Shown piece after piece: positions 7,731-58,241 of a DNA stretch of 64,000 nucleotides. The position numbers and the translations under genes are program-made. The stretch is from contig OZ260664.1 of the NCBI GenBank assembly GCA_965285935.1, positions 23,932,001 through 23,996,000 on the forward strand, written 5' to 3'. Source of the stretch: Ophelia neglecta. Lineage: Eukaryota. A model generated the notes under the pieces. The model ran no database searches. It was not told where the DNA came from and saw nothing but the letters and a program-made list of their open reading frames with translations. Each line of letters starts with the position of its first letter. The stretch's first letter is position 1.

Positions 7731-9329
7731 TGCTGCTCTCCGGTATCTTTACTGTTAAATTAATAAAATGATTACCGTTGGGTCACTACAGGCTCTCTAT
7801 CGACTTCGCAGTGAGGTTGCAGTATGCTCACCGCGTCCCATTTTGCATGTTAATAAACGACCTCGCTGTAATCTCACCACGACCTAGAGGCACAGCTGCG
7901 GCAACTTCTTGCCAGAGGTAAGGGTTAGGTCTAGATGTTAAATGTGTGATAAGCATCCGGCTGGTTCAAGATCATTTCTATTATTTGCAGAGTAATTTAA
8001 GTAAGGGCCAATAATGAGCGCTATAATGCTTGTGCACCGCCTATTTCATTTGAAAATGTCTATGAAAATTCAGAATTATATGAAAATTCAGAATTCTGCG
8101 AGGCACTAAATAATTGCTGTGTAATTTTAAAGCTGTGCTTGGAATCTTTAATAAATAAAGTTATCAACCCTCTTCTCTGAACCCTGACGTAAAGCAATTT
8201 AACTGTTTAACACTTAGTTGCATGTATCCTGATATCAAATATCATAATCCTCTGTCATAATATAATTTTCTGTCAGTAAAATGCCATCTTGTGAAGGGCC
8301 GAGGGTGCTTCGATTACCAAGTTAGGACAGAACGGATCGTGCGAGCTGTGTTAGGTACACCACCTCTGTTATTAAGGGAAGGCCAAATTAACCACGCATG
8401 GAAAGCTGTTTTTATAGAAATTGATAGACGTGCTTTTGGTACAAATATAAATAATAAAGCAGGTTGTATTTGCAAGCCACCAAGCATTGGTGTGTATATC
8501 AAAACGGCAAACACAATAAAGTAATTAAGTGCTCACCGGGGACATCCATTTATTTATTATTTAATAAACAATTCGATTATAAGTTCCAATATTTCAGCCA
8601 TCAAATATTTTATTTTCATTACTAGCAGGCGTGCACCCATCTCCACTTACGTAAAGCAACGATCAGTGTTTAAATCAGGATTTAACTCAAACCACCTCAA
8701 ATAAACTGCTTCACGGCTCATTTATATCCTTTTCATAACATTTGGTAATAAATATTGAAAAAATATCCAGTGACCCATAGATTTTCTTTAAGTTATTGAA
8801 TTCTGACCTCATCTTATTGCCTCGTGTAAATTACGGACATAATTGAACTGGAGAATTTTTTTTATTCATATTTTACTTTTTTTGACAAAAACATGGTTTA
8901 AATGCTAATTTGGGATCACTGAGAAACGCCCATTAGCCTGAAGGATCATTGGAAAAAAATTCCCAATAAAGGTCTTCACGTGTAGTGTCTACCTATATAT
9001 AAGGCCAACTAAATATAGACAGTTCCAAATGTTTGCTTCTATATCTCTCAATGAAGAATATCATCTTCCTTAAGTCTAATAACTCACAAATTATTTGGAT
9101 TCTGCTAAAATGTATTGTGATGAGCAAAACGAAGCCATGGTGAGATTTGTCAGTGATTGACGTCTGGCAGTTGACTCAGTCGTCAGAGAAATCATCCTGC
9201 CTCCCATGCGGACGAATATGATGGCAGAGAGAAACCCTGGTCATTGGCCCTTCAATATTTTCTGAAAACACCCTCCACAATAAGCACCATGAAGCTATAA
9301 GCCTCACAGGCAGGTTTCCCGCTTTGATC

Positions 9330-9571
9330 TCTCATTAAGCCAATAATGCCGGTAGCTCCATTTCTGTATTTGAACAGCAAAACGTAGGCAAATAGAGGCA
9401 CGAGGCGATAGAGACGAGTTGTCTTTCATTGGACAGCCTGATAAAAGGCGGAGTCTGGCAGAGTGTATTAAAGACATCCACTACCGACTAGAGATCACAA
9501 TACTCTTTGAATTCCTGCAGTGCGCAATTGAATTTAGAATTGTGTTCAAAAGAAAGGAAGCTCTTCCACTG
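9330..9571 (+). promoter_or_regulatory. Putative promoter and non-coding first exon of the ASCL gene
   Basis: CCAAT/ATTGG boxes, N-box CACGAG at 9399-9404, TATA-like GATAAAA near 9441, strong donor CTG|GTAAGT at 9571/9572 that can pair with acceptor ctttttttacag ending 10582. Confidence 0.45.
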
Positions 9572-10601
9572 GTAAGTGGCCTTTAAAATTATTGAAAGTT
9601 TTAGTGATTTGGTTGTTGAAATTCATTCATAGTTTGTTTCATAAAAAAACACATTTGATAACAGTTGTCAATTTGTACGTCCGATGAAAAAACTACACTT
9701 TTCATCGTTAACATTTTGAAGAGAGCTATATAAGCCAACACTTCCTTGAGGCAGCACAGTATTAAAATTTTATAGATTCAATTAATCATAACGAAGTACA
9801 GACCCGTAGCCAGTCAGGAAACGTTCGAATTTTCCTTAAAAGTTTACTTGAAGTGAGGTCGCGTGCTATTGGGTTCGGAGATTGCCCTCCCGAAACGTTT
9901 GTAAAGCCATTGACTGAAAAGTACACTTTAAACCACATTAAATTTTATGGGTGATTCATAAAAAGTCCCCTTCAGGCGGTGGTGGTCAATTGAATCCCTA
10001 GAACTTCACCTCCCCTTGTCTAGGGCATTCTCGCACCCGAAAATAATTGTAGAGGTTAAAATAACGAGTTAGATATAACGAATCTTCATCGAAAGTCAGC
10101 ACACATATTTAGGCCATATTTATTCATAAGGTTGGCATAAAGGGCGGGTATATAAGGTACATAAAAATGCTGGTGTTATAATTTGGAAGTTGTAGTGAGA
10201 GTTTCTCTGATATATTCTTTCTTATTGTCGTTATATAAGAGTTCGAGAACGAAATGATAAAGAACCTTGTTTGAAACTTTCTTGAGAAATGAATGAATAT
10301 ATATATGTAATATGGCGAATAAGCAGAAGCCACGTATAAAACGACAACTAGCGGGCATTGAATGAGAAAACGGCTAATATACTTACTTTGTGATTTATTT
10401 GTTTATCTGCTATTGATAAATGCTCCATTTATTGAATGCATGACATCGCATAAAAACGGGTTCTAATACTGTATAATAGTGGGTATATCTATTTTATGTT
10501 ATTCTTTCATATTGATGAAAGGCTTTTCTATTGCGATTAATTCTGCTTCAACATAATTTACACAACTTGACTTTTTTTACAGTCCGTTGATCCCAGAATT
10601 C

Positions 10602-11216
10602 ATGATGCAAAACATCCGGCGCCTTCATACCTTTTCGTCACCGACATGTGAAGACCTTGGTCTGCCAAGAGACGCCGTGGATTACGAACCACTCAGTGAC
10701 GACAGTAATGAAAGTTATTCTAAGATGGGGTTTCTTTCACACGACCCCTCTGATAAGCTGAACATCAACGGATTAAGGTACGAACCGGAAAACCCAAACA
10801 ATCCATTTTCGCCTTATTGCCGGATACCGTTACCTAATCCGTACGGTTGCTACGAATACGGAATGGAACCGGCGTTCATTAGGAAACGAAACGAACGCGA
10901 GCGCGAGCGAGTGAGGTGTGTAAATGACGGGTACGCCAGACTGAGGGAGCATCTTCCGGTCGATCAAAAACCTGAGAAAAGAATCAGCAAGGTGGAAACG
11001 CTTCGCGGAGCCATTCGCTATATAAAACAACTACAACATCTGCTGGAGAAAGCAGACGAAAAAGGCCCTGAACAGACATCGCAACCGCTAAATCTTAAGA
11101 AAAGAACTTTTGAAGAGGTGGATACAAATGTTAATAACGAAAGTATCAAAGAATTGCCTCCAAAGAAAAGAGCGTGCAGTTCCATCGACGCTCGTTCGAG
11201 CTCTAGAAGGAGTTGA
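10602..11216 (+). CDS. ASCL: Achaete-scute family bHLH transcription factor, ASCL3/4/5 (ASC-b) type
   Basis: EPAFIRKRNERERERVRCVNDGYARLREHLP...KRISKVETLRGAIRYIKQLQ is the ASCL3/4/5-type bHLH; first ATG (10602) follows a splice acceptor at 10582; single coding exon; AATAAA downstream near 11604 and 11739. Confidence 0.95.
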   Translation: MMQNIRRLHTFSSPTCEDLGLPRDAVDYEPLSDDSNESYSKMGFLSHDPSDKLNINGLRYEPENPNNPFSPYCRIPLPNPYGCYEYGMEPAFIRKRNERERERVRCVNDGYARLREHLPVDQKPEKRISKVETLRGAIRYIKQLQHLLEKADEKGPEQTSQPLNLKKRTFEEVDTNVNNESIKELPPKKRACSSIDARSSSRRS

Positions 11217-14200
11217 GAACAAAACTTAGTACCAGTATATTAGATCAAAACATATCTGTCCCATACAGATTATTGTATATTGTTACCAATGATGATCTTC
11301 ACCAGGAATTGCAAGACATTATATAGAGGCTCTAAAACAGACTTTGTTTTGACAATTATTGTGTGATCAACATTTCCCATTGAGAAAAAATAGAACTCTT
11401 AAGAATGGAATTGAAGCATAACATAGCTGGGCACAAAAATGATACGATTAATAAGAATTCTCTTTTAATATAGGTAAATTTATTCGGTAGTCGTTATTTT
11501 CCTGCAATCACTACAAATCTAGTCATGGTCTTTGTCGAAGAAGCTATTTGTGTATCGACAGATGTTGTTTCGGCAATGTTATTCTTGTATATCTAAGACG
11601 GAAAATAAAGGATACAGAAATGTGTAAATAAGCACCTGTCATGATTTCTTCATCTATATAATTAGAACACCCATTCGCGATGCGGCAAATCTGCCGCAAC
11701 ACCCCTCGCATGTCAGAAACTGTGAATTCAAAAGAAACAATAAACTGTGGCCATTCACAATTCTAAAACGCGTCCTAAAGTGCTCTAATTAAAAGTCATC
11801 TCTTTGTGATGGCACATACCAAACGATTCAATACCAACTCTATCGAATTTCCTGGATGGCCGAAACAAACGTGCTTTCTGGAGTGCGTGTCCCCTGAAAG
11901 CCAATTCGGGCGAATTGACACAAGCCACAGGTGACACGTTTAGTTTCTGCTCGATTTCGGAGAAATAAGCAAGTAAAATTCAATCTGCAAGCGGATCACA
12001 CCTGAAGCTTCTTTTGCACATCTCTATACATAAATGTAGGCCTAACCAATATGCCAAACTTTTTTTGAATCAATGCGCACGAAAAAATTTTATGATTAAA
12101 TCTATCAAAAATCAGGAGGCATGTCGTATTTTTCTAGTTAATGTTTAGTATAGGTTACTTAATCCCGTTTATAGGCTATAGGCTATATTAAAAGTATGTA
12201 ATTTTTGACATTCTTAGCTTCTAACAGTGAACTCGAAAGATTGGTCCTTCCCTCAGCTATACGTGTACATCCATCTCGACACATGTATAGTGTTTTTTTT
12301 TATTGCGGATTGCTTTTAAGTGCGTTGAATTAATGAGTATTATCTTACGCAGAAAATTATGTTTGTTTTAGTCTGTGTGTTCATGAGTCTGGTTGATTCA
12401 TATTGTTTCTTTGTGTCATCCGCACTCATTTTCATCAAGCTGTATTGAAAAGTGTTACATTTGGTAGTGGAAGAAACACATAACAACATATTTACATATT
12501 TACAGTGTGGCCAGTGAAAAGATAAGTAATGCAATGAAACAATGTGTATACCTACCATGGTAACTCATCTTCGATTGATGATTAACATATTTTTTTCATA
12601 TCAATTTGTGTCTCTTTAAGTGAAACCACAAAATAAGCCTTGTGTTGAGGTATACCCTACAAGAGCTGTAGCTAGATACGGGTCCAGATAGCAGCCGATA
12701 TGTAAATTAAAGTGCTCCTCGGACTTATGATATCTTTATCATAAAACCAGAAAAAAAGAATAGTCTAGTGGTCTAGAAAAGTTTGAAGACAGTATAATCA
12801 TGGCAGCCATATAAGGCTCTTTTTAGGCACTGAATGATTTTAATTTACCCTCTTCTGTCAAAGCTAATATGAACTCCCCAAAACGTAACGCACTTTTAAA
12901 ATGCTGGTGGCACTTCATTTCTGCTAGCCGAAGCCTGTTGACGACCTGTTCTTAACTAAAGCTTGCCATTATCGAAGTATGATTCGACAATTAGTGTATC
13001 GGATGTCGGCTGCGAAAACACACGTGAAAACGAGCACACACCAGTTGCATATCAAATCGCGTTTGAGCAGCGGACGAAAGGTGGATTTAACGGTTCAAAA
13101 AGAGCCACGTGTTTACTCAGCGGCTCTCGGTCGATGATACGGCTTCATCACGGCAGCTGAATCTCGGCAAATGTAAAACTAAGCCGACCCAGCACTGTCT
13201 GATCAGAGCTCAGTGACGAAAAGGGCGCCAAATCCGTTTAGAACGCTATGATCCTACAATTTGCGAAAGATAGATATCAGGATGTTTTCATAGTACTCAA
13301 TAACAGCTTAACGAACGGAGAGCCATGAGCACAATTAAAGACTTAAACAAAGCGCCACCCGCAATACTAAATCCAAACTAAAATGTGTAAGCTATAAAAG
13401 GCTCAAACGTAATTATGAGCTCTTTACATTAATTAAAGCAATCATTAACAATGTGGTCAGAAAGAGACTTTTTGCTAATCACTTCAAGATGTGTGTTACG
13501 CATATTTTTGGGCATAGACACTTCCGTGGTGGGGAGGCGGGTGAACATGAAGACATTTTTAAACTAACATCACCTTCTATTGCAAAATGCATCATATTAT
13601 TAACAGTAATACTTCCAGCTAGAAACACGGACAAAATGGAGACTTTGTACACAACTTGTATGCCTACATAATATATTTGAATTATGTACACGTTTTATTA
13701 GATGTGGAATAAAAAATTGCGCCATTCAATACCTTTTTTTTCAGTCGAGCCGAACTAAGCCAATCAAAAAATTATTTTATAAAAAAATATTCTGTTTAAT
13801 ATAGTTTAACGTGAGTTTTATCTAGTAATATTGTGTTCTACTACCGTATGGATATGCTTAATTTTGATACCAGTTCCGCGTTTACAAGCAACCTAATAAG
13901 TAAACCTATAGGGGTAGCTTAGCTCTTAAAATGAATCAACGGTCAGATTTTTTGTTCCACCCACGGTTGGCACATAAGCATTTCTCAGATTGACAACAAG
14001 AGATACATACAATCAGACTTTTCCGTACGTCTCCGTACGTCTGCTGTAGTCATTCATGTAGTTTATATACACGTTAATACAACTAAATCTACCGTTTTTA
14101 TTTTTCATTGGCTTAAATCGTCATATCTGACTTATCCGTTATTGGAGGCAGGTGCTGATGAAAACAGGAGACACGTGTGTCACAAGACCTCATTATATCA

Positions 14201-16495: not shown

Positions 16496-18949
16496 CTATC
16501 AGTATCAATAAAGAGGACGTTTTTCTTTTTCTTAATTGTGTTCTAAAGCATATACACAGCAAAGCAAGGTCAACATAGAATCATACACAAGGAAGTCCTT
16601 TAACGGATAGGACATTTAGCTGTACTACCATAGCAGTCTGCACACTTGTTGTGTTTTGTTCTGAACAAGCACCTACTTGACCTTTTAATTGGACGCCAAA
16701 GGTAAGGATGGAGGCATAGAGACGGAAGGAAACAAATTAAACTTGTGATATAATTCTGGCTTGCTCTTACTCCAATTTAGATATGGTTCAACAGCCAATG
16801 ATTAAGCCAGCCTAATATCGTAACCATTAAATGTAGAATAAGAATGACTAACAGAATCATAACTTATTACGTCACGCCGTTTTATAGTATTATAATAGCT
16901 ACTGTCAATATCTTTCGAGGTCCCCATTTGACACTTGATTAAGAAAACAAATACCAAACTTTGTTAGAGACCTCTGTTAGAGAACAGCCTGGATGTCAAT
17001 GTGATGAGTGTAGGATGCGTGGGTGCTGATTAATAGCCATTATTTACAGTTATAATTGACAGTACACATACAAACACTCGCTAAACGAGTTCTCCTCTGT
17101 TCGGACGGCACGACCGTCATTGACAGAACTACGGTTGGTGTATTCAGCCTCAACTATACTACCATATACATGTTTTTTCAAAAGAACGATAGTACCCGAT
17201 ACGGTTTATTTCTGCTTGACTTTCTGCCAGGTGCAGGTTTAGACACACGCTCGTTTATAAATGGTTGCGATAATTATGACGAATTCGATATAAATTACAA
17301 GAATTCTTTTCTTACTGGAACAATAAGACAGCGTTTGGAAGAAGAAAAAGGTATGAGAAACCCGTGTAATGTTTAAATTATTACACCTTGAAACAAGTGT
17401 GGGTGGTCACAATTTTGCCTGTTTTTTTTTAAAGTTTTTTTTAGTTTCCACAAACAAAAGCACGGAGTTGCATAAACTATCATTCCAACATTTTTGATCT
17501 GCAGAGGAACGGATGTACTATGCATGCAAGGGTTTTAATATTTACATTGTTATCATAGCATTTAGAGATATATTGTAACCTTTAAGTTCTGGACATATCA
17601 GTAATGAAAAATAAAACCGCTCGTACACGACATGATAAACAAAGAATTAAGGAGAGAACACAGTGTAATTGTTGCTTATTGATCCGCCGTCCAAATCATA
17701 TGCAGATGTGTAAGTCGGGAATATTACTGCAAATATACAGGAGCTACATGTTTTTGAAAGGTCGTCCGAGTCATATTAAGTGTAGTGACCCAAAATGGTA
17801 TTTTTAAATGGCTTGTTGATCATGCTGTATGTTTATGATGGAAATGTTATCAATGTTGGAATATCATGAAATGTGTATTTCGTTTAACGAATTGTCCCGT
17901 TGGTGGATACACTTTCTGGCGTTATCCTTTTCTTATACATGTATACTGTGATCTCTTGGATGTAGGGACACCTCTGCGTCCAAGCAAACGTTTCCCACAA
18001 TAGCAAATGTTCCTTCATCAGAGGGACATTAACATGGGACAGATAGGACATGGGCATTGAAAAACGTCCTGTGGTCGGAGGGAGTCCCTTCATCGGAGGG
18101 TCCTTTCATCCTAGGGACCAATGTAGTCTATTTTCATGTGTAAAGCTTAATATGTTGCAAAAGTGCTATTCGCCATTTAATCGATTAAGAATTAATGACT
18201 CCATTCCCGCCTTTGGAATTTCGTGTGTGTATTGAATAAAATCATTTCCTGCTTATTATTAATTAGTGCCTATCCATTTGAGTTTCTACGTTAAAGAGAC
18301 AGGCCCGGAAGGTTTTTACTTTTATGTGTACACCATGTATTTGACATGAACATTGATGCTGTTTAGATTTATTAACTCACAGTTATGATTTAGTCTTTAT
18401 CGGACCATGCCGAAAATCATCCCGGGGTTACCCAGCTTCGGGTGACCTCGCAACCCGCCAGGGGTCGCCGGGTAATCCGACCTATACTACGTCATTGCCC
18501 GGGTTTTCCTTATTTGAAAAATAACTTAAGTTTGGTTTAAACATATTTATTGGGATTGAACTTATAGCGCCAGGCTTATGGAGCTGTCTTTCCTTAATGA
18601 CAATACAGATTAACAATAAATAACGAGGTGGAAATAACGTAATTACGGACGAACAAGAATTATTAATTGAAGGAAGTCACATAGAAAAGAGAGATGAATT
18701 ACATTTTTTTAAAGTTTCTGCCTACGGAAATTGCGATACTTGTGATGTTGGATTTCAGTGTAAACCAATTGTGCCATGAGTTCAAAATTGTTTAATTGTA
18801 TAAATTGAAATATTATTTTCATCTCCAACAAAATTGAAACGTAGGAAGCAATATGTTCTGTGTCAAATATATATTGGCCTGTCAAACGACCCTTTGCAAG
18901 AAAATACCATGCTTTGCTCTATGGCAAACTTTATTCATTTCAACATAGA

Positions 18950-26363: not shown

Positions 26364-27458
26364 TCACCCTGCTAAGTGTAGTCTCTTACTGGCATAAACA
26401 TCGTCTGCTTCTGTTGAAGTGATATTACGTAAAATGGAGTCTGTCGTCCTTTCTTCCTTCGACGAGAAGCACGTTGTTTTCTTCAGAATCCAGTTTTGAA
26501 ACACCGGTATCCTAAACGCATATATTATAGGATTTATCGCTGAGCAGAGTATAGCAGGAATATACAAATATCCGCGTATCTTGGAAAAGTCGTAAGAAGA
26601 ATACACCTCGGCTGCCAAGGCACACTGAAGAGGTATCCAGCATATTAGAAATGTCCCCAAAACCAGCAATACAGTTGTTATCATTCTTATTTCTTTTTGA
26701 TAAATGTTCTTACTGTTTATTGAAGAAGACATGCCTTTAAATTTGCTTTTATTTATATGGGTCTTAACAGCTTTTAAGATAGGGATGTAGCTTAACAGAA
26801 TGAAAGCGGCTGCCAAAAAGAAAACTGGCGTGAACACAAATCTGTAAAAGTCCTTGTGAATATCTGTCATCAAATCACAATCCAGGTATATTTTACATTC
26901 ATTGCCTGCGTGTGCCCCATTCCGATGAAAATAAGACCACAATGTTGGAAGTAAAAAGCCAAACGCAAAAGAAGGCAACCAGACAAGGAGAAGACACAAG
27001 GTGCGAGCCCGTGATATTGTCATTACAACACGATATTTCAAAGGATGGAGGGTGGCTAAAAATCGGTCCATTGTCATCATCATAAGTCCGAGTACGGACG
27101 CGCTCTCTGGGAAGATGAAAACTGAGTAATTTAAAATACAAATAATGTCAATATGATTGGATAATTGGAGTTTTCTAATTACATGAATTATAACCCCGGT
27201 AATAGGCAAGGTAAGGCCTACCCACAAATCCGCGATCGCCAGTTGGAGAATGAACATATTAGTCACAGTTCGGGCGCCCCTTTTTCTCCTATAGCAATCT
27301 ACTACATATCCATTTCCTACACAAATTAAAACCGAGATGATGATATACAGACAGGGCAAGATAATGTCATTCAGCAATGAGGAGCGACTGGCTCTGTCTG
27401 GTTTGTCGCATGTTTCGTTGCCAGGCGTCTTGGTGAAAGTGGTAGGGAAACTCTCCAT
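26364..27458 (-). CDS. Intronless rhodopsin-class (class A) GPCR, adenosine-receptor/GPR119-like orphan, 364 aa
   Basis: Seven hydrophobic segments with GN (TM1), TNMFILQLAIADL (TM2), DRF (TM3), W (TM4), FLICWIP (TM6), NPIIY (TM7); N-terminal NET sequon; first ATG at 27458 (the track starts at TTG). Confidence 0.93.
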   Translation of the reverse strand: MESFPTTFTKTPGNETCDKPDRASRSSLLNDIILPCLYIIISVLICVGNGYVVDCYRRKRGARTVTNMFILQLAIADLWVGLTLPITGVIIHVIRKLQLSNHIDIICILNYSVFIFPESASVLGLMMMTMDRFLATLHPLKYRVVMTISRARTLCLLLVWLPSFAFGFLLPTLWSYFHRNGAHAGNECKIYLDCDLMTDIHKDFYRFVFTPVFFLAAAFILLSYIPILKAVKTHINKSKFKGMSSSINSKNIYQKEIRMITTVLLVLGTFLICWIPLQCALAAEVYSSYDFSKIRGYLYIPAILCSAINPIIYAFRIPVFQNWILKKTTCFSSKEERTTDSILRNITSTEADDVYASKRLHLAG

Positions 27459-27835
27459 TTCAGATAGGCATACATCAAGGACTTCACATAGAAACACAAT
27501 ATCCTTCAACTAAAAACGTGGTGTGACCGAAAGTCTCGACTTTTTCAGCCGCGTCCATTTCACTGAATGTAGGTCAGTCTCGATTCCAGGATATTTAGAT
27601 CTATAAAGACCGTGTGTCTAAACATTTCCCAAGTGCTGGCTTGTTCACCGGAATGCGTTTAATGAATACAACAATAAATACACATGGTTACTAAATACAA
27701 GCAAGGCAATCCTCTGGTAAAGTCAGTTAATTGGCCCATGCCTGGTATGGTTTGTTTGTTTAGCACGCCTTTGTCTGCCGATAATGTTGACATTATGCTA
27801 TCTCCTGACGACACGCACAGTTTGCTGTTGACCAT

Positions 27836-41544: not shown

Positions 41545-42585
41545 TAGGGCTACGTTTGGGCACTGCTCAATTCACATTCCTAATGAGTGCCTGTGCGACG
41601 GGGACCTGGTACAAGCAGTATACCCAACATTAGAGGGTGATGTTTCCAAACAAATAATACTAACCCCCAAAAATGACACCATCTTGGCCATCAACAGAGA
41701 AATCCTCAAACAACTTCCAGGGAGCAAAAAAAAACCTGAGCATTGACTGTATTGTGTCCCACAACCCTGACGAGAACAATTTCCCAGTTGAATTCCTCAA
41801 CAGTCTCACTCCGTCAGGAATGCCAGAGCACAAAGTGATCCTGAAGAAGGGTGCATTGATAATGCTCCTTCGTAGCCTTGACATTAAAAATGGCTTTTGT
41901 AATGGGACCCGCCAGATTGTTCGTCACCTTCATGCCGACACAATTGGCACAGTGGTTGTGGCGAACACACAGGCAGGGAAGAGGATTCTCATTCCCCGCA
42001 TTAAACTCGCCCCATCAGATGTGAATTTGACTATCGTCCTAGAACGCATCCAATTCCCTGCTCGGATAGCCTATTTAATGACGATCAACAAGGCGCAAGG
42101 GTAAACATTCAAAGAAATAGGCATTTACTTTCCTGACCCTGTTTTCACACATGGACAACTATACATAGCCTTCTCACAGACAAAATCATTTCAACGCATT
42201 AAAGTAAAAATCGTGAACACCACAAAGCAGGGTTATGCATCAGACACCATGACAACAGTCACCAAAACTGTTGTGTATCCTGAAATTCTTCAATGAACTG
42301 CTCGAGAGGTGTTCGCTGGATGACTGGAATAAAACTTAAGACTACCTTTGCTATGTATGTTTCATTCAAATCTGTTTGCACTTTTATTGTTTTGTCTCTC
42401 CCAACATTGGCAATATATAGGCACTATCATTTATGATGGATTTTTTTTATACCAACTTACTTTTCTATTTTTTTGTCTCAACCCAGCATTATAATAGTAA
42501 CAAATAAAAACTGCCCTCTTCGAATAGACCACCATTCAATCCACTGCTGCCCTTTTCACCGTGGTTGCCCACGGGTCACTGCTAG
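41545..42585 (+). mobile_element. Helitron 3' fragment: decayed PIF1-family helicase C-terminus plus canonical 3' end
   Basis: ILTPKN...[frameshift]...FLNSLTPSGMPEHKVILKKG...MLLRSL...CNGTR...IPRI...RIQFP...MTINKAQG*TF...VFTHGQLYIAFS...VVYPEILQ* (stop 42294-96); hairpin CCGTGG-ttgc-CCACGG 42559-42574; CTAG 42582-85, then T. Confidence 0.93.
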
Positions 42586-53230: not shown

Positions 53231-56200
53231 TCACGTTGGTTGCAGTGTTGCTGGAAGCTTTCTATGATCATCGTCGTTCATCACTACGAAGGAAAACAAT
53301 ATCATGAAGAGGATATGCAAGTATATATTAATGTAGGTATCACAGCGTTTGTTGTCTATACCTACATGGCATATGGATCATGTACAACAATTATTCTTAA
53401 AACAAAACTAATGTGCTTTTCTAACTGCGACTATTATTTTCTAGTTGTTGGGGGCCTTTTTTCGCTCCAAATATGTCCAAAAACATTAATTTCAAGATAT
53501 TTTGGCACGCAACCCCTCCAGTTTCCTAATGATACGTCGTAGTTATTCTATAGATCTATATATAATAATATCAAAGCATCGTATTAATATTAATATTTAA
53601 CCAAACCCATGCGCCTGTTTCTGAAGAATAAAGTACACTGGTTTCGTCGACAAACATCGTAGCAGTAATAACAAGGTGTTGACATCGTGATGCTAAATTT
53701 GCACTTAGAAATACAATCCCAATGGTTGGTGTCTATGGTTAAGATCAAATTTTAACACTGCTCGAGTTCTAATAACTTTTAACACGGACGCTTCCCAGTG
53801 CCGAGCGGATTTTTTCCCCAATTTGTGGGTATACACTTTATTGTAGACAGTAAACCGGTGATGGCCTCATGTTCCATCTATTAACCCTATGTCCAGGAGA
53901 TAAGAAAGTGACACCGCAAGCATCACCAAACTTGAAAGCTTCTAATAAAATTGGTTCTTTGAACAATACCTTAACTTTATACTTATATAAAGTGTTCACC
54001 TCTGTTTAATTGCTTTTTTCCCGACCTCTGTACGAGAATATCCGTAATCCACAGTACAAAAAACACCACTGTCAGAGCCAGACCTGCATAACCCAGCGTG
54101 GCAACATCGACTTCAATTATTTGAAGAAATCTGTCTTTTGCTACAATGTTACTAGCCCACTGAAAAAATGAAGTAAAATATAAAATATCACTCATGTGTT
54201 ATTATCCCACTTTTCCCCCTACGAAAAACCATTCTTACTACAAATCGGAGATGAAAGTGATGAAAATGAATTATATGTCTTTAAAATAGTTGCAGTTATA
54301 AAATGCCAACCGACTGATCCATTCTGAGCTCGTCCATATCTACAAAAGCTTGAAACCTCATCTTTTCCACAGTTCTAGACATACAATCTTTCACTTCAGA
54401 GTTCAGGTCCCGCAGCACAATGCCATAAATGGTTGGAAATTGCTTGTCGGTCGTGATTTTAATATTTGAAGAAGCAAGTTGCTTTATGACACTAAACTTT
54501 TGTAGATGATCCAACAGCATAAATGACCCCTTTCCAGACGAGGAGGCCGTGTAATTAACTACCATGCTCCGAAGATTGTTATAAACTGAGAAGGTAGTAT
54601 AGACTAATGATTTCAATCATCTGATCAACTTAGACAATATACATAATCATGTGAGCAGCATTTGTCATAAATAACGAACAATACAAATGTATCAGAGCTT
54701 TTCATCTTGTATACAGAGAGGCAAGTGTCATATATTTGAGAAATGCACTATATAGAGCCTAATGCCATCGCCGGTTTATCATATATCACACTTGTCACAC
54801 TTTGAGAGTATTGGGACTCATTTTTGCAAAACAAATCCCAATCTACGAAATATTTAACAAATGCAAATCGCGCTAGCTACCGTCATTGTCCAAATACATT
54901 CATTCGCATGATATCTACTCACTGCAATCAAATAAACCCTGTCCGTCTTATACGCCGTACTCAGGAAAATAAAAAATTCCGATAGGGTCGCTCTGTGAAG
55001 ACTTTATGGGCATTGATCTAATTCTTTTGTATATAACTTGTAATGTGCAAGCATAAATGTTTAGTAAGGGTTTTACGCACTAAGTTTTGTGAAATTTCGA
55101 TTATTCTGTGGACATTTATGACAATAAACTTGATACTATCATGACTATTTGACTCGAGAATAAACAGACTATGGGTTACATAGTGTGATATCCAACTGCC
55201 ACAATGCAATTCAATTGACCCAACTGGTTTATTTTCTACAATGTCAACATTTGTTCCAGACTCGAGAATTTTTGCTTGGCCCAACACAAACTTTTAGTTA
55301 CAAAAAATGGGGGGAGTGCTCACCGTGAATGTTCGCGCCCATTGCAATGGCATATATCATTTCTTCTGTTCCGTTCAATACATCTACCTGAAGTTATGTA
55401 ACGGTATTACTACATACATGTTGATCAACATGTAATACACCATCGCATACCAAGGTGTCTGTAACGTTTCTACTGTTTACTCCGGGAGCGACGATGGAGG
55501 GATAACGTTTACTTTTGTCAGCTTACATCTGAGCCAAACGGTATTTCTCGGTCCTTTGCACTGAGGTTAAGGCTGGTCGTGAGACAAGCGGTGAACAAAG
55601 CCATCAGACCAGCCCCTATCAGCATCCACACCACACCAAAAACTCGGGCTACTACGAACTTAGGCTTTCTATCACCATATCTGAAATGGAGAATACTCCT
55701 TTGGGGCTTCCTAAAACATCGCTCTGTGCATCAACAATGAGGCACACGCACACACTACTCATCGGGAATAGTCAGTTTATCCTGTATTCATTATTAATAT
55801 GCCTATATTATAAAACATCAGACTTAGCGTAAAACATAGTTAATTTGGGTACCTAAGCTTGGTCTTTGATGTTTGTCTCCTTACGTTTTTCATTTCGGTT
55901 TTCAAATAGCCAGTTCTTAACTATAATTGACTGAACTATAATATAAATCAAACTAGGCAATGATAAACGGATCGTACGTTAACCTAAGCTTGATACCAAA
56001 AAGTGATGCACTCATGAATGTTTCTCCCACTATAAGTCCTAACAAAAAACGACCCAGGACTTACCCTACAGTGGTAGCAGTGACAAATGCCCACCATAGA
56101 CCTTCTCCAAAACCATTTAGAAAAGGACGTGGAAATTCTACGGGATTCTTGCGACAGTCCTAAACAATATTATTGTCAGCCTTAGATTATTTTTGTAAAC

Positions 56201-58241
56201 AGGTTCGTAAAAGAACATTCGAATTATGTTAAACTAGAAATATCTAAATCTTATCTTTGAAGCCAATACAATTAAACTTAAACATTTTAATGGTTGAGAG
56301 TTAGCATTATGTTTAGACGTAAACATTTTTATGCGCAAAAGAAGAAGTCAGGAGATGTCCATAACGTTTGATCTGATAGTAATCATAAGGGCTTAGATGA
56401 AGTAATCAATTGTAGTGGGGGAATGTTACGTACCAGGGCCCACATGACAATACCTGCCATGCCACAGGCGAGAAGAAGGATGCATAGGATTGGCCACATC
56501 ACCACAATCAGCCCAAGCAGGCCTTGGGAATTGTCGGCACCGTTGGCCGCTACCTGGCCGGCGGTGGATAAGAATGTAAAACCTGGAAATACACAGTCCT
56601 AATCAAGTTGGGTGCCGGACAGATAGGAACAAGATTTAGCTGGAAATAAAAAAATCACTGAAAAACCATTGGTTTTGATGGTTACATATATGGAACAACT
56701 AGAAATTACGAACCCTTTGGAGTAAATTCTAACTTTGTCCAGCTTTGCTGGCATTCTGGCCATAAGCTGTAAATGTTTTTATCGTGTAAACTGCATTTTA
56801 TATTATGTTTGGTCGATTTAAAAAAAAACTGATATCAAACTTCATGAAGTCCATATGTAAATAAACATAGTAGTTGATGAGCCAATGGAAAAAAATTGGG
56901 AATCAAGTATAACGTGACCCGACAGTAGGCTAGAACGGTTGTGGAAAACCATGAAATCAAGAACCATATTATAATAAACGCTTGTTAACTGGTGATTTAC
57001 AGTGGCATGGGATTCAAGTAGTACTGAACTCAACACCAACTTGCTCTGTCTTCCGGGTATCCAGTCCAGTTTTAAAAGTGCTTAATACAGATATTGACCG
57101 AACACGATATTCGAGTCGGCTGCATGGCTCGTGACCATTACAAACCCTCTCTGAATAACTAGCCCGCACGATAATTCCCCCCTAGTTAGTTTCACCGCGG
57201 ATAAGTATTGCACTAAATTCGCCTTATGGTCACAACAAAGGCTACCGTGCATGTTGAAATTAGTTAACCGGTAATCTTAACCAAGATTTAACCGACAATT
57301 AATGCCGCAGGATACTTTGGTCAGTTAAGTTATTTACTCTGTAGTACAGCCAGCTACCTCCCAATAGTATCCTCTTTTCCCTGGACAACAAAGGTGCAAC
57401 GGTAGATATGAGAGGTTTACAACGAACGTGTGGTATTATTATAAAACAAACTTTAAACTTTAATGTTGTTATAGACAAGCAGTACAGACTTTTTATAATC
57501 TGATCATCGTATAAAGATGGAACAGCGTAGCTGTTAGCATTTGACATTTGTACAGCTACTATTTATTTCGTTTTAATATGTTCACGAATACTTCTTGAAC
57601 TTTTGTGGGTAGTCTTGGATTCGCACGTCAACTAGGTATTTCATTAATAAACTTTATGCATCGTGTTGCTGAAGACTAGCTCTATAGCTGAGGTACTTAG
57701 CTAAGCTTTCATTGCATTTATTGCCCACATACTATATCAACCGTAATCATTTTCTTTTCTTCGATCCTCGAATAAAAAGTAAACGTATTTATAGATTCTA
57801 TGTTACTTGGCTTCCAAGAGAGAGAAGTCCCATTCAACCATGTGGTTGACAAACAACGTGAGCCCTACATTTTTGCCGCTCATTTTTGCATGCAAGATAC
57901 GGGACTACCGAAAACTCACCAGGACTCTCCATAACTGGCAAAAACACCTCGGCTCCTTGGACATAGGTCTGGAGCCTCAACAATGACTTTCGTATGGGGA
58001 AGACGAAGCTGACATTTCCGGGAGTGATTTCCAAATCTCGAGGGTTAGTGGCTGGGTAGCCTGTCCCAAGTTCGGCACCAGCCTCGCAGCAGACGTCGAT
58101 GAGACGACGAAGAGTATTCGTAATGACTCCGGGGTTGCACGGAAGGCTGCGGGGAGCATTCAATGTGTCATTCACAATGCACACCAAAGGAGGGAGATTC
58201 ATATAAGCATAGCTGAGCTTCGAAATGTTAGAGCAGGCCAT
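53231..58241 (-). CDS. Ligand-gated ion channel-like protein with iGluR topology (S1-M1-P-M3-S2-M4) and K+ selectivity filter TTVGYGD (GluR0/AvGluR1-like), ~423 aa, 8 exons
   Basis: Exons 58241-57920, 56582-56434, 56159-56065, 55680-55527, 55387-55324, 54585-54311, 54159-54000, 53283-53231 (1272 nt, phase-consistent). M1 WPILCILLLACGMAGIVMWAL; pore EGLWWAFVTATTVG|YGDRKP; M3 ARVFGVVWMLIGAGLMALFTACLTTSL; S2 VDVLNGTEE...YGIVL; M4 LGYAGLALTVVFFVLWI. Start and last exon are less certain. Confidence 0.87.

What the first reader, a model, noticed from the sequence alone, without database searches (positions are those of the whole stretch)
53231..58241. Intron-rich animal gene for a GluR0/AvGluR1-like channel: glutamate-receptor architecture with an intact K+ filter
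Seen: splicing 8 exons gives a solute-binding-like lobe (YMNLPPLV...FVFPI...FLPVMESPG), M1, a pore loop WWAFVTATTVGYGD, an inner helix ALFTACLTTSL at the SYTANLAAF position, a second lobe (VLNGTEE...YGIVL) and a further TM helix. There is no voltage sensor, T1 domain or N-terminal LIVBP domain. The filter is split by an intron (TTVG|YGD), so the ORF track misses it. Known: animal AMPA/kainate/NMDA/IR receptors lack TVGYG; the characterised receptors with both features are cyanobacterial GluR0 (no M4) and rotifer AvGluR1 (with M4). Inference: a member of a poorly characterised family of possibly K+-selective, hyperpolarising ligand-gated channels. The divergent, Cys-rich binding lobes suggest a ligand other than glutamate, and seven introns argue for long residence rather than contamination.
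Basis: partly seen in the sequence, partly recalled or inferred. Interest (0 to 1): 0.9.

Follow-up and report, generated by a model that had tools for sequence, protein, structure and literature searches.

The report
Annelid potassium-filter glutamate-receptor-like channel gene
This is an intact seven-exon worm gene for a channel subunit that has a textbook potassium-selective pore set into the domain layout of a glutamate receptor, and it belongs to a small, essentially undescribed annelid gene family that would extend a rare "missing link" type known from one cyanobacterium and one rotifer.

Summary
The minus-strand gene has 7 coding exons, not 8, at 58241..53983. All junctions are GT-AG. 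It has 411 sense codons and no internal stop. A phase-2 intron splits the filter (TTVG|YGD).

The order is lobe 1, M1, pore helix with TATTVGYGD, M3 (LFTACLTTSL), lobe 2, M4, then a short basic tail. There is no ATD, voltage sensor or T1 domain.

Eight loci in this genome carry the family's E3 and E4 exons with the same filter intron. Relatives exist in two other samples and in Capitella teleta, whose annotation breaks the gene at that intron.

Paralogues and the Capitella gene start with clear signal peptides. That puts lobe 1 outside the cell and the pore in the inverted, GluR0/iGluR orientation.

Lobe 2 matches the corresponding part of bacterial amino-acid-binding proteins weakly but collinearly in two separate exons (P 0.0045 and 0.0019; 0 of 200 shuffles each).

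Lobe 1 matches nothing. This gene's own subfamily has no signal peptide. No RNA data exist. The whole-protein fold test could not be run because joining exons was barred. Claims about the ligand are untested.

Verdict: probably a GluR0-plus-M4-type, K+-selective, ligand-gated channel subunit, and a new variant of a known kind.

The parts
57920..58241 (-). Exon 1: start ATG at 58241. Encodes lobe 1, the S1-position domain, residues 1-107 plus 1 base. Donor CCTG|gtgagt, phase 1. No signal peptide.
   Evidence: Homologous exons in L011, L013, L014 and P0016. The Met is at a conserved position with a purine at -3. No Pfam or PDB match.
56434..56582 (-). Exon 2: pre-M1 linker and M1. The M1 helix LLGLIVVMWPILCILLLACGMAGIVMWAL is about 56434-56520. 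Its N-side flank is acidic.
   Evidence: Family homologues.
56065..56159 (-). Exon 3: basic M1-P linker, pore helix, and the first half of the filter (FPRPFLNGFGEGLWWAFVTATTVG). It ends GG|gtaagt, phase 2.
   Evidence: Pfam Ion_trans_2 E 0.023. Family alignment A4. 8 loci in the genome at E <= 2e-15.
55527..55680 (-). Exon 4: completes the Gly codon, then YGD, then M3 (FVVARVFGVVWMLIGAGLMALFTACLTTSL, about 55569-55658), then the linker to lobe 2.
   Evidence: Ion_trans_2 5.5e-5 (23.4 bits, cut-off 22.5) and Lig_chan 0.0061. Across the family, Ion_trans_2 hits 8/8 and Lig_chan 7/8. Against PDB, KcsA 2e-5 and GluN1 M3 6e-4.
55324..55387 (-). Exon 5: start of lobe 2 (VDVLNGTEEMIYAIAMGANIH). It corresponds to the 'VGV..GT' strand-turn of amino-acid-binding proteins.
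   Evidence: hhalign of A10 vs E. coli GlnH/ArtJ/ArtI/HisJ/ArgT: score 17.9, P 0.0045, template columns 132-144. 200 shuffles reached at most 17.0.
54311..54585 (-). Exon 6: main part of lobe 2 (..FMLLDHLQKF..YGIVLRDLNSEVKDCMSRTVEKM..). The donor TCG|gttggc is weak, but sits at the same position as the orthologues' donors.
   Evidence: Best or only PDB hit is the binding protein AncQR (4zv1), E 0.034 and 0.26, residues 158-218 of 233. hhalign vs E. coli SBPs: score 25.7, P 0.0019, columns 167-235 of 252. 200 shuffles reached at most 19.4. Donor positions.
53983..54159 (-). Exon 7: W of the lobe-2 end, M4 (ATLGYAGLALTVVFFVLWITDILV, about 54031-54102), basic tail QRSGKKQLNRGEHFI, and stop TAA at 53983-53985.
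   Evidence: M4-plus-basic-tail homologues in L011, L012, L014, L015, L016 and L034.
56786..57714 (.). 929-bp segment inside intron 1 that is missing from an alternative allele in the same sample. It is single copy and not part of the coding sequence.
   Evidence: Joint 56785>57715 in all three DNA runs. Single copy in the genome. No terminal repeats.

Best explanation
The locus is an intact, selectively constrained gene for a 411-residue subunit of a tetrameric P-loop channel built like the cyanobacterial glutamate receptor GluR0 with an added fourth membrane helix.

The proposed layout is:
- an extracellular lobe 1;
- M1;
- a re-entrant pore loop carrying a complete K+ selectivity filter (TATTVGYGD) that enters from the cytoplasmic side;
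- M3;
- an extracellular lobe 2 homologous to the second half of a type-II (SBP_bac_3-like) amino-acid-binding protein;
- M4;
- a short basic cytoplasmic tail.

Proposed mechanism (inferred, not shown): the two lobes form a clamshell. A small ligand, most likely amino-acid-like, closes it and pulls on the M3 helices to open a K+-selective pore. Activation would then hyperpolarise or shunt the cell.

Shown here: the exon structure, the filter, the three hydrophobic helices, the family of 8 loci, and the conservation in other annelid DNA including Capitella. Also shown are signal peptides on paralogues and the weak but collinear similarity of lobe 2 to binding proteins.

Inferred only: the clamshell fold of lobe 1, the topology of this particular signal-peptide-less copy, K+ selectivity, ligand gating, and expression.
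For: Gene model and reading frame:
-.

Conservation:
- Exon-by-exon homologues with identical boundaries on L011, L012 and L035, and in own-genome paralogues.
- pN 0.35 vs pS 0.78 against L011; dN/dS about 0.27 against L012.
- No indels or stops in the exons across the alleles of three DNA runs.

Pore and M3:
- Ion_trans_2 over its cut-off on exon 4 alone. Lig_chan hits in 7 of 8 family E4 exons, best 1.4e-6.
- PDB matches to KcsA and then to GluN1 M3.
- T-[AM]-T-T-[VI]-G|YGD in all 8 loci.

Topology:
- Cleavable signal peptides directly before lobe 1 in the C12 and C8 paralogues, in P0003, P0004, P0007, P0008 and P0014, and in Capitella P0015.
- The N-flank of M1 is acidic and its C-flank basic. 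The tail after M4 is K/R-rich in every member.
- GluR0 has been shown experimentally to have this inverted orientation (PMC13099474).

Lobe 2:
- Two separate exons align to adjacent, collinear parts of E. coli GlnH/ArtJ/ArtI/HisJ/ArgT. E5 aligns to columns 132-144 (P 0.0045) and E6 to columns 167-235 (P 0.0019). 0 of 200 column shuffles reached either score.
- The only PDB hit for the E6 profile is the amino-acid-binding protein AncQR, in the same register.
- Language-model neighbours of E6 include a rotifer 'glutamate receptor' cluster, and the nearest Pfam-bearing cluster is SBP_bac_3. This is a lead only.
Against: - Lobe 1 has no significant match to any Pfam family, PDB chain or SBP profile, even with a 15-sequence pan-family alignment.
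- Lobe 2 shows no similarity to animal iGluR ligand-binding domains of the same genome. It reaches no Pfam threshold. The hhalign probabilities are low (12-15%).
- Single-exon AlphaFold models were uninformative (pLDDT 55 and 45). The E1+E6 co-fold gave no verdict.
- This gene and its closest relatives (L011 A and B, L013, L014, P0016) have no signal peptide. No upstream signal exon was found in 5.7 kb.
- There is no RNA evidence.
- Within-sample polymorphism is 7 nonsynonymous to 5 synonymous, which points to only mild constraint.
- The M3 motif is LFTACLTTSL rather than SYTANLAAF.
Confidence: 0.62

Rival explanations
1. The gene encodes a K+ channel subunit with the same topology, but its extracellular lobes are degenerate and no longer bind a small ligand. 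The channel would then be a leak channel, or one gated by something else (protein partner, pH, ions), or this subunit would act as a silent or modulatory partner of the signal-peptide-bearing paralogues.
For: - Lobe 1 is unrecognisable and shorter between its conserved motifs than in binding proteins.
- The Arg of 'PRD' is invariant only within this subfamily and is lost in the C12 paralogues.
- The lobes diverge very fast (E6 10-17% identity between subfamilies) while the pore is conserved.
- Polymorphism is 7 nonsynonymous to 5 synonymous.
Against: - Lobe 2 keeps the VGV..GT motif and the Asp that aligns with the ligand-binding Asp of GlnH/HisJ in 7 of 9 members.
- Lobes are under purifying selection between species.
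- Fast-evolving ligand-binding lobes are also typical of chemosensory receptors.
Confidence: 0.2
2. Because this subfamily has no signal peptide, the protein inserts with its N-terminus inside, like a canonical 2-TM K+ channel. The two 'lobes' would then form a cytoplasmic domain, and the last helix would be a C-terminal anchor.
For: No signal peptide in E1 of the window gene, L011 A and B, L013, L014 or P0016. The start Met is at a conserved position, and no upstream signal exon was found.
Against: - Homologous lobes of the paralogues and of the Capitella gene follow cleavable signal peptides.
- M1 has an acidic N-flank and a basic C-flank, as expected of a reverse signal anchor.
- The K/R-rich tail after M4 would end up outside.
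- Conserved Cys residues (the CC pair in E1 and Cys in E6) suggest disulfides.
- It follows from established knowledge that many GPCRs translocate N-tails without a signal peptide.
Confidence: 0.08
3. The locus is a recently silenced or unexpressed gene copy, an intact-looking pseudogene of the family.
For: - No RNA data.
- A weak E6 donor, GTTGGC.
- Exonic SNP density is similar to intronic density, and 7 of the 12 exonic SNPs are nonsynonymous.
- No signal peptide.
Against: - 411 codons are open across 7 exons with all splice sites intact.
- No frameshift or stop in any allele.
- Orthologous copies in two other samples are conserved exon by exon, with dN well below dS.
- The nonsynonymous SNPs do not hit family-invariant positions.
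Confidence: 0.07

Closest known systems
GluR0 (Synechocystis slr1257), the prokaryotic K+-selective glutamate receptor
   Same: - No amino-terminal domain.
- One binding-protein-like domain split by an M1-P-M2 pore with a TxVGYG K+ filter.
- Membrane orientation opposite to canonical K+ channels (PMC13099474, PMC11479355, PMC12332018).
- Similar size, about 400 residues.
- Lobe 2 of the window gene resembles bacterial SBP_bac_3 proteins rather than animal iGluR domains.
   Different: - The window gene has an additional C-terminal helix (M4) with a cytoplasmic tail, which GluR0 lacks.
- It is an intron-rich animal gene in a multigene family.
- Its lobe 1 is not recognisable as a binding-protein half.
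- No direct sequence match to the GluR0 ligand-binding domain appeared in the PDB searches.
AvGluR1 of the rotifer Adineta vaga
   Same: - A eukaryotic (spiralian) channel with a K+-channel signature filter in a glutamate-receptor architecture that includes M4.
- Described as resembling bacterial receptors and as K+-selective (PMC12226733, PMC12332018, PMC11479355).
- Language-model neighbours of E6 include a rotifer 'glutamate receptor' cluster. This is a lead only.
   Different: - The reviews cited describe AvGluR1 as having the full modular architecture of eukaryotic iGluRs. The window family has a signal peptide (or just a Met) directly followed by lobe 1, so it has no ATD.
- The AvGluR1 ligand-binding domain has solved structures (Lomash 2013, as cited in PMC11479355). 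From my own memory, not checked here, these are PDB entries 4IO2-4IO7. No such chain was named among the hits of the lobe profiles at E <= 10.
- A direct comparison of the pores was not possible, because no AvGluR1 sequence was on hand by reference.
Canonical animal iGluRs and IRs (AMPA/kainate/delta/phi, NMDA, epsilon, lambda)
   Same: - The order S1-M1-P-M3-S2-M4.
- The M3 helix aligns with GluN1 M3, and Pfam Lig_chan hits lie below threshold.
- An FLPV..SPG pre-M1 motif recalls FLDPL.
- YGIV...W sits before M4.
   Different: - A K+ filter instead of the Q/R/N-type pore loop.
- No ATD.
- No SYTANLAAF motif.
- No profile similarity of the lobes to S1S2-type sequences of the same genome.
- The SBP_bac_3 model finds 36 other exons in this genome, but not this locus.
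2-TM K+ channels (KcsA/Kir-type, Pfam Ion_trans_2)
   Same: The pore helix, the TTVGYGD filter and the inner helix. KcsA is the best PDB match to exon 4. Ion_trans_2 scores over its cut-off.
   Different: - Large flanking lobes that carry signal peptides in paralogues.
- A third helix after lobe 2.
- The inferred orientation is inverted.

Membership tests
iGluR superfamily, GluR0-like (K+-filter) branch | S2 half of a type-II periplasmic-binding-protein (SBP_bac_3-like) domain between the inner helix and the next element | tested here: met
   E5 and E6 profiles align collinearly to E. coli GlnH/ArtJ/ArtI/HisJ/ArgT at columns 132-144 and 167-235 (P 0.0045 and 0.0019). 0 of 200 shuffles reached either score. 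The sole PDB hit is AncQR, in the same register. The significance is modest, and no Pfam threshold is reached.
iGluR superfamily, GluR0-like (K+-filter) branch | S1 half of the same binding domain N-terminal to M1 | tested here: inconclusive
   No significant match for E1, the C8-type S1 or the pan-family S1 alignment. The best non-significant hhalign match does lie at the expected beta1/'PPF' position. The single-exon AF2 model had pLDDT 45.
iGluR superfamily, GluR0-like (K+-filter) branch | Inverted pore topology: N-terminal lobe outside and pore loop entering from the cytoplasm | tested here: inconclusive
   For the family this is met by inference. Signal peptides precede lobe 1 in the C8 and C12 paralogues, in several database relatives and in Capitella, and the charges fit the positive-inside rule. 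For the window gene itself no signal peptide was found. No experimental topology is available.
iGluR superfamily, GluR0-like (K+-filter) branch | TxVGYG K+ selectivity signature in the pore loop | tested here: met
   TATTVGYGD across the E3/E4 junction. It is conserved in all 8 loci.
Eukaryotic iGluRs (including AvGluR1) | M4 helix after S2 with a cytoplasmic C-tail | tested here: met
   E7 has a 24-residue hydrophobic helix followed by QRSGKKQLNR. Homologous M4 plus basic tail occurs in L011, L012, L014, L015, L016 and Capitella L034.
Eukaryotic iGluRs (including AvGluR1) | Amino-terminal (LIVBP/ANF_receptor) domain | tested here: not met
   Lobe 1 follows directly after the start Met (window type) or after the signal peptide (C8 and C12 types, Capitella). 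No conserved upstream exon was found.
Eukaryotic iGluRs (including AvGluR1) | SYTANLAAF gate motif / Pfam Lig_chan (PF00060) over threshold | tested here: not met
   The motif is LFTACLTTSL. Lig_chan scores 16.8 bits against a cut-off of 30.8 for the window exon. There are sub-threshold hits in 7 of 8 family exons. Only single exons could be scored.
K+ channels, Pfam Ion_trans_2 (PF07885) | Pore helix, TVGYG filter and inner helix matching the model over its cut-off | tested here: met
   E4 alone scores 23.4 bits (cut-off 22.5). E3 gives E 0.023. 8 of 8 family E4 exons hit, best 7.3e-8. KcsA is the best PDB match.

The most novel reading that the evidence does not exclude
Annelids keep an old, intron-bearing, multigene family of ATD-less, M4-bearing glutamate-receptor-type channels with a working K+ filter. 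That would make ligand-gated inhibitory K+ channels of the GluR0 lineage a regular part of spiralian physiology, or of chemosensation with fast-evolving lobes, and not a rotifer oddity. One subfamily, including this gene, would be inserted without a signal peptide. This gives a natural intermediate (GluR0 plus M4, minus ATD) for the step-wise assembly of animal iGluRs.
Probability: 0.4. Interest if true: 0.8.

Novelty: new variant of a known kind. Interest (0 to 1): 0.62.

Why it matters
The origin of glutamate receptors from a K+ channel pore and a bacterial binding protein rests on very few living intermediates. One is GluR0 in cyanobacteria. The other is AvGluR1 in a bdelloid rotifer, a lineage known for foreign genes.

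A conserved, intron-rich family in annelids that has the K+ filter, an M4 helix and no ATD would be a third architecture, different from both. It would show that such channels have long been resident in bilaterian animals.

It would also make two questions directly testable: whether animals use ligand-gated K+ channels of this lineage for inhibition or chemosensation, and what M4 contributes before an ATD was added.

There is a practical lesson too. The family is hidden from annotation because an intron splits the filter. In the searches run, which covered limited protein-length ranges, the only named database entry found was a Capitella model truncated exactly there.

Tried and rejected
- **Joined CDS.** All searches were exon by exon, by reference. 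The only cross-exon step was coordinate bookkeeping of codons, used to check the frame and classify SNPs. Nothing joined was printed or searched.
- **Pfam on single exons.** No SBP family for E1, E5 or E6. A sub-threshold Glyco_transf_92 hit on E6 occurred in 1 of 4 relatives and was dismissed as chance.
- **Exhaustive HMMER search with E6.** Only two exon-sized fragments were found in 1.84 billion representatives.
- **ESM Atlas.** Nothing for E1. For E6, leads only.
- **AlphaFold2 on E6 and E1 alignments.** pLDDT 55 and 45, too low for fold search, so no fold search was run.
- **Complex prediction on E1 with E6.** 'No answer' (score 0.00). This is neither support nor evidence against.
- **hhalign of the lobes against animal S1S2-type ORFs of the same genome.** No signal.
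- **hhalign and PDB searches for lobe 1.** Three alignments were tried and none gave a signal.
- **Upstream signal-peptide exon.** A search of 5.7 kb, plus a search for conserved extra exons by tblastx, found none.
- **RNA runs.** None hold the locus. The reads laid were DNA contigs.
Rejected, because the frame closes at 53983 and nothing downstream is conserved.
- **A full-length annotated relative.** Length limits, and the split Capitella models, prevented me from getting one by reference.
- **Lomash 2013 (PMC4096996).** The paper is not held.

Full report
**Scope and constraint.** The decisive whole-protein fold test therefore could not be run, and that limits the verdict.

**1. The observation.** The gene is on the minus strand. 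I find seven coding exons.
- E1: 58241-57920. ATG at 58241; donor CCTG|gtgagt, phase 1.
- E2: 56582-56434.
- E3: 56159-56065. It ends GG|gtaagt, phase 2.
- E4: 55680-55527. It begins A TAT GGT GAT.
- E5: 55387-55324.
- E6: 54585-54311. Donor TCG|gttggc.
- E7: 54159-53983. Stop TAA at 53983-53985.

All junctions are GT-AG and the phases agree. The frame has 411 sense codons and no internal stop.

The frame closes at 53983, and nothing downstream or upstream is conserved with relatives.

**2. The exons are real coding exons.**
- A homologous gene on an independent 56-kb contig (L011, gene B, 8625-10793) has all seven exons with the same boundaries. A second tandem copy lies next to it.
- Two short contigs from another run carry E1 (66% identity), E6 (63-65%) and E7 (44%).
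- Introns are not conserved.
- Against L011 B, pN is 0.35 and pS 0.78 (saturated). Against L012, dN/dS is about 0.27.
- The weak E6 donor sits at exactly the position of the stronger donors in the orthologues.

No RNA run holds the locus. The three runs that do hold it are DNA contigs of one sample and cover the introns. They show no indel or stop in any exon. They show 12 exonic SNPs, 5 synonymous and 7 nonsynonymous, none at family-invariant positions. They also show a 929-bp deletion allele inside intron 1.

**3. Anatomy.**
- E1 (107 residues) plus the first 20 residues of E2 form lobe 1.
- M1 is LLGLIVVMWPILCILLLACGMAGIVMWAL. Its N-side flank is acidic (ANGADNSQG) and its C-side flank is basic (DCRKNPVEFPRP).
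- E3 and E4 carry a K+-channel pore helix and filter (GLWWAFVTATTVGYGD), then the inner helix FVVARVFGVVWMLIGAGLMALFTACLTTSL.
- E5 and E6 (about 115 residues) form lobe 2.
- E7 carries a 24-residue helix followed by QRSGKKQLNRGEHFI.
- There is no voltage sensor, T1 domain or ATD.

Database matches for the pore and inner helix:
- Pfam on single exons gives Ion_trans_2 for E4 (23.4 bits, cut-off 22.5) and E3, plus a sub-threshold Lig_chan hit on E4.
- In the family, Ion_trans_2 hits 8 of 8 E4 exons and Lig_chan 7 of 8, best 1.4e-6.
- Against PDB, the E4 profile matches KcsA best (2e-5), then the M3 helix of GluN1 (6e-4).

**4. A discrete gene family.**
- Profiles of E3 and E4 find exactly eight loci in this 762-Mb genome at E <= 2e-15. 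A clean gap separates them from ordinary K+ channels.
- The loci are the window gene; two tandem genes at C7:46.07 Mb; one at C8:37.42 Mb; two tandem at C12:43.75 Mb; and one each on C2 and C39, which are possibly allelic.
- In the seven loci where both exons were read, all but C39, the filter is cut at the same place. The lobes diverge strongly (E6 10-17% identity between subfamilies) but still align over conserved motifs.
- E1 and E6 of the window gene are single copy.

**5. Topology.**
- The C12 paralogues begin MGINLLIVSMYVLIGAGLSGSS and MKMIQFLLPMCVFILARSSGSS, directly before lobe 1.
- The C8 paralogue has signal peptide, lobe 1 and M1 in one exon.
- Database relatives P0003, P0004, P0007, P0008 and P0014, and Capitella teleta CAPTEDRAFT_188994 (P0015), also have signal peptides.

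Lobe 1 is therefore extracellular in the family. This forces the pore loop to enter from the cytoplasm, lobe 2 to be outside and the basic tail to be inside. That is the GluR0/iGluR orientation, shown experimentally for GluR0 in PMC13099474. The charge distribution around M1 and M4 agrees.

The unexpected point is that the window gene and its nearest relatives have no signal peptide. These are L011 A and B, L013, L014 and P0016. They start at a Met a few residues before the mature domain. The Met has a purine at -3 and sits at a position conserved between the window gene and P0016. I found no signal exon in the 5.7 kb upstream that the window holds. Either M1 acts as a reverse signal anchor, as in many GPCRs (established knowledge; the flanking charges fit), or an exon is missing. 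RNA data would decide.

**6. Are the lobes a binding-protein clamshell?**

Lobe 2: yes, at modest significance.
- The E6 profile has one best or only PDB hit, the amino-acid-binding protein AncQR (4zv1). E is 0.034 with four sequences and 0.26 with nine, at residues 158-218 of 233.
- Against an alignment of E. coli GlnH, ArtJ, ArtI, HisJ and ArgT, hhalign aligns E6 to columns 167-235 of 252. The score is 25.7 and P is 0.0019. 200 column shuffles gave mean 10.4, sd 1.9, max 19.4.
- The separate 21-residue exon E5 aligns to columns 132-144, the VGV..GT motif. The score is 17.9 and P is 0.0045; the shuffle maximum was 17.0.
- The two matches are collinear and contiguous. They begin where GluR0 and iGluRs resume their S2 segment after the pore.
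- In that register, the Asp of FMLLDH aligns with the Asp of the 'D(T/E)' motif of GlnH/HisJ. From my own knowledge, not tested here, that Asp binds the ligand's alpha-amino group. It is kept in 7 of 9 family members.
- The secondary-structure order in the low-confidence AF2 model of E6 fits the template.

Lobe 1: unresolved.
- No Pfam, PDB or profile match was found for three different alignments.
- The best non-significant alignment does fall on the beta1/'PPF' motif, where S1 should start.

Other results:
- Neither lobe resembles animal iGluR ligand-binding domains of the same genome.
- The single-exon AF2 models (pLDDT 55 and 45) and the E1+E6 co-fold (no verdict) add nothing.

**7. Distribution and annotation status.**
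- The exhaustive search with E6 found only two exon-sized ORFs.
- Searches with E1 and with the C8-type first exon found only unnamed exon-sized ORFs from ENA, Logan, JGI and NCBI, plus one named entry.
- The named entry is Capitella teleta CAPTEDRAFT_188994, which UniRef calls 'Potassium channel domain-containing protein'. It is 212 residues long and stops exactly at ...TMTTVG.
- In the Capitella contig, the YGD exon, lobe 2 and M4 lie 4.7 kb further on. They sit inside a second gene model of 397 residues with a faint Lig_chan hit. The annotation is thus broken at the filter intron.
- A search that allowed proteins up to 607 residues and used the nearly invariant M1 of the C8 type found no full-length model.
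- Earlier notes of this scan call the genome an annelid. The Capitella homologue (73% identity over M1) fits this, but I did not identify the species.

**8. Literature.**
- GluR0 is K+-selective, lacks M4 and an ATD, and is inverted relative to K+ channels (PMC11479355, PMC12332018, PMC13099474).
- AvGluR1 of Adineta vaga has eukaryotic iGluR architecture with a K+ signature. It is described as highly atypical and bacterial-like (PMC12226733, PMC12332018).
- PMC6307864 does not mention potassium or GluR0 at all. The passages of PMC12226733 that my term search returned mention no K+-filter class in annelids.
- Four full-text searches found no description of such a family.

**9. Mechanism and verdict.** The most likely reading is a subunit of a tetrameric, K+-selective channel of the GluR0 lineage with an added M4, gated through a bipartite extracellular domain. 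I put this at about 0.6.

Shown: the gene structure, filter, helices, family, conservation, signal peptides in relatives, and the homology signal of lobe 2.

Inferred: the clamshell, ligand gating, K+ selectivity, expression, and the topology of this signal-peptide-less copy.

The retained GT and Asp positions hint at an amino-acid-like ligand.

Rivals:
- a channel with degenerate, non-binding lobes (0.2);
- a canonical-orientation channel with cytoplasmic lobes (0.08);
- a silent copy (0.07).

Novelty: a new variant of a known kind. It is GluR0-like with no ATD, eukaryote-like with M4, found in a bilaterian, and essentially unannotated.

Noticed in passing
G000 C12 and other contigs: L021:1336-2079(-), L022:1240-2037(-), L023:1405-2067(-), L024:1357-2037(-), L026:1363-2253(-), L028:1441-2097(+), L029:1501-2124(+): Many single-exon ORFs encode the end of S1 joined directly to S2 of an animal-type iGluR ligand-binding domain. 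They have no membrane helices in between, and they end in a short hydrophobic tail. These are 'channel-less S1S2' proteins, possibly lipid-anchored. They were found through the SBP_bac_3 scan.
   Followed up: partly
window 56786-57714 (intron 1 of the gene): All three DNA runs of the sample contain contigs that skip these 929 bases, with TTAT in their place. This is a heterozygous or population deletion allele. The segment is single copy in the genome and has no terminal repeats.
   Followed up: yes
L034 (Capitella teleta KB300141.1) 10001-12122 and 16764-18538: The Capitella orthologue of the C8-type family member is annotated as two separate gene models, split exactly at the TTVG|YGD intron (4.7 kb there). 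The second, of 397 residues, carries M3, lobe 2 and M4.
   Followed up: partly
L034:17661-18110(+): A 149-residue ORF just after the M4 exon of the Capitella gene has a heptad-rich, coiled-coil-like stretch (..LENLIHWQKKELQELQEEMAEFRANWESKLRELRQRH..). It probably belongs to the 397-residue model. If so, the C8-type subfamily has a long cytoplasmic tail that the window gene lacks.
   Followed up: no
L017:1184-1753(-) (G000 C8) and P0003-P0015: In the C8-type subfamily the signal peptide, lobe 1 and M1 are in one exon, whereas the window type has an intron there. The M1 segment SDLLTVILQGWPMLxxILLGAGYSGIIIWLL is almost invariant across at least ten database clusters, far more conserved than in the window type.
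   Followed up: partly
window 10587-11216(+), 26364-27509(-), 41673-42104(+): The neighbourhood holds a bHLH-domain ORF (HLH, 7e-18), a single-exon rhodopsin-family GPCR ORF of 381 residues (7tm_1, 4e-36), and a Pif1 helicase 2B-domain fragment that may be a Helitron remnant.
   Followed up: no
L011:3783-6034(+) and 8625-10793(+); G000 C7:46.06-46.09 Mb; C12:43.74-43.77 Mb: Family members often lie in tandem pairs in the same orientation. This holds both in the foreign contig and in this genome, and points to repeated local duplication.
   Followed up: partly
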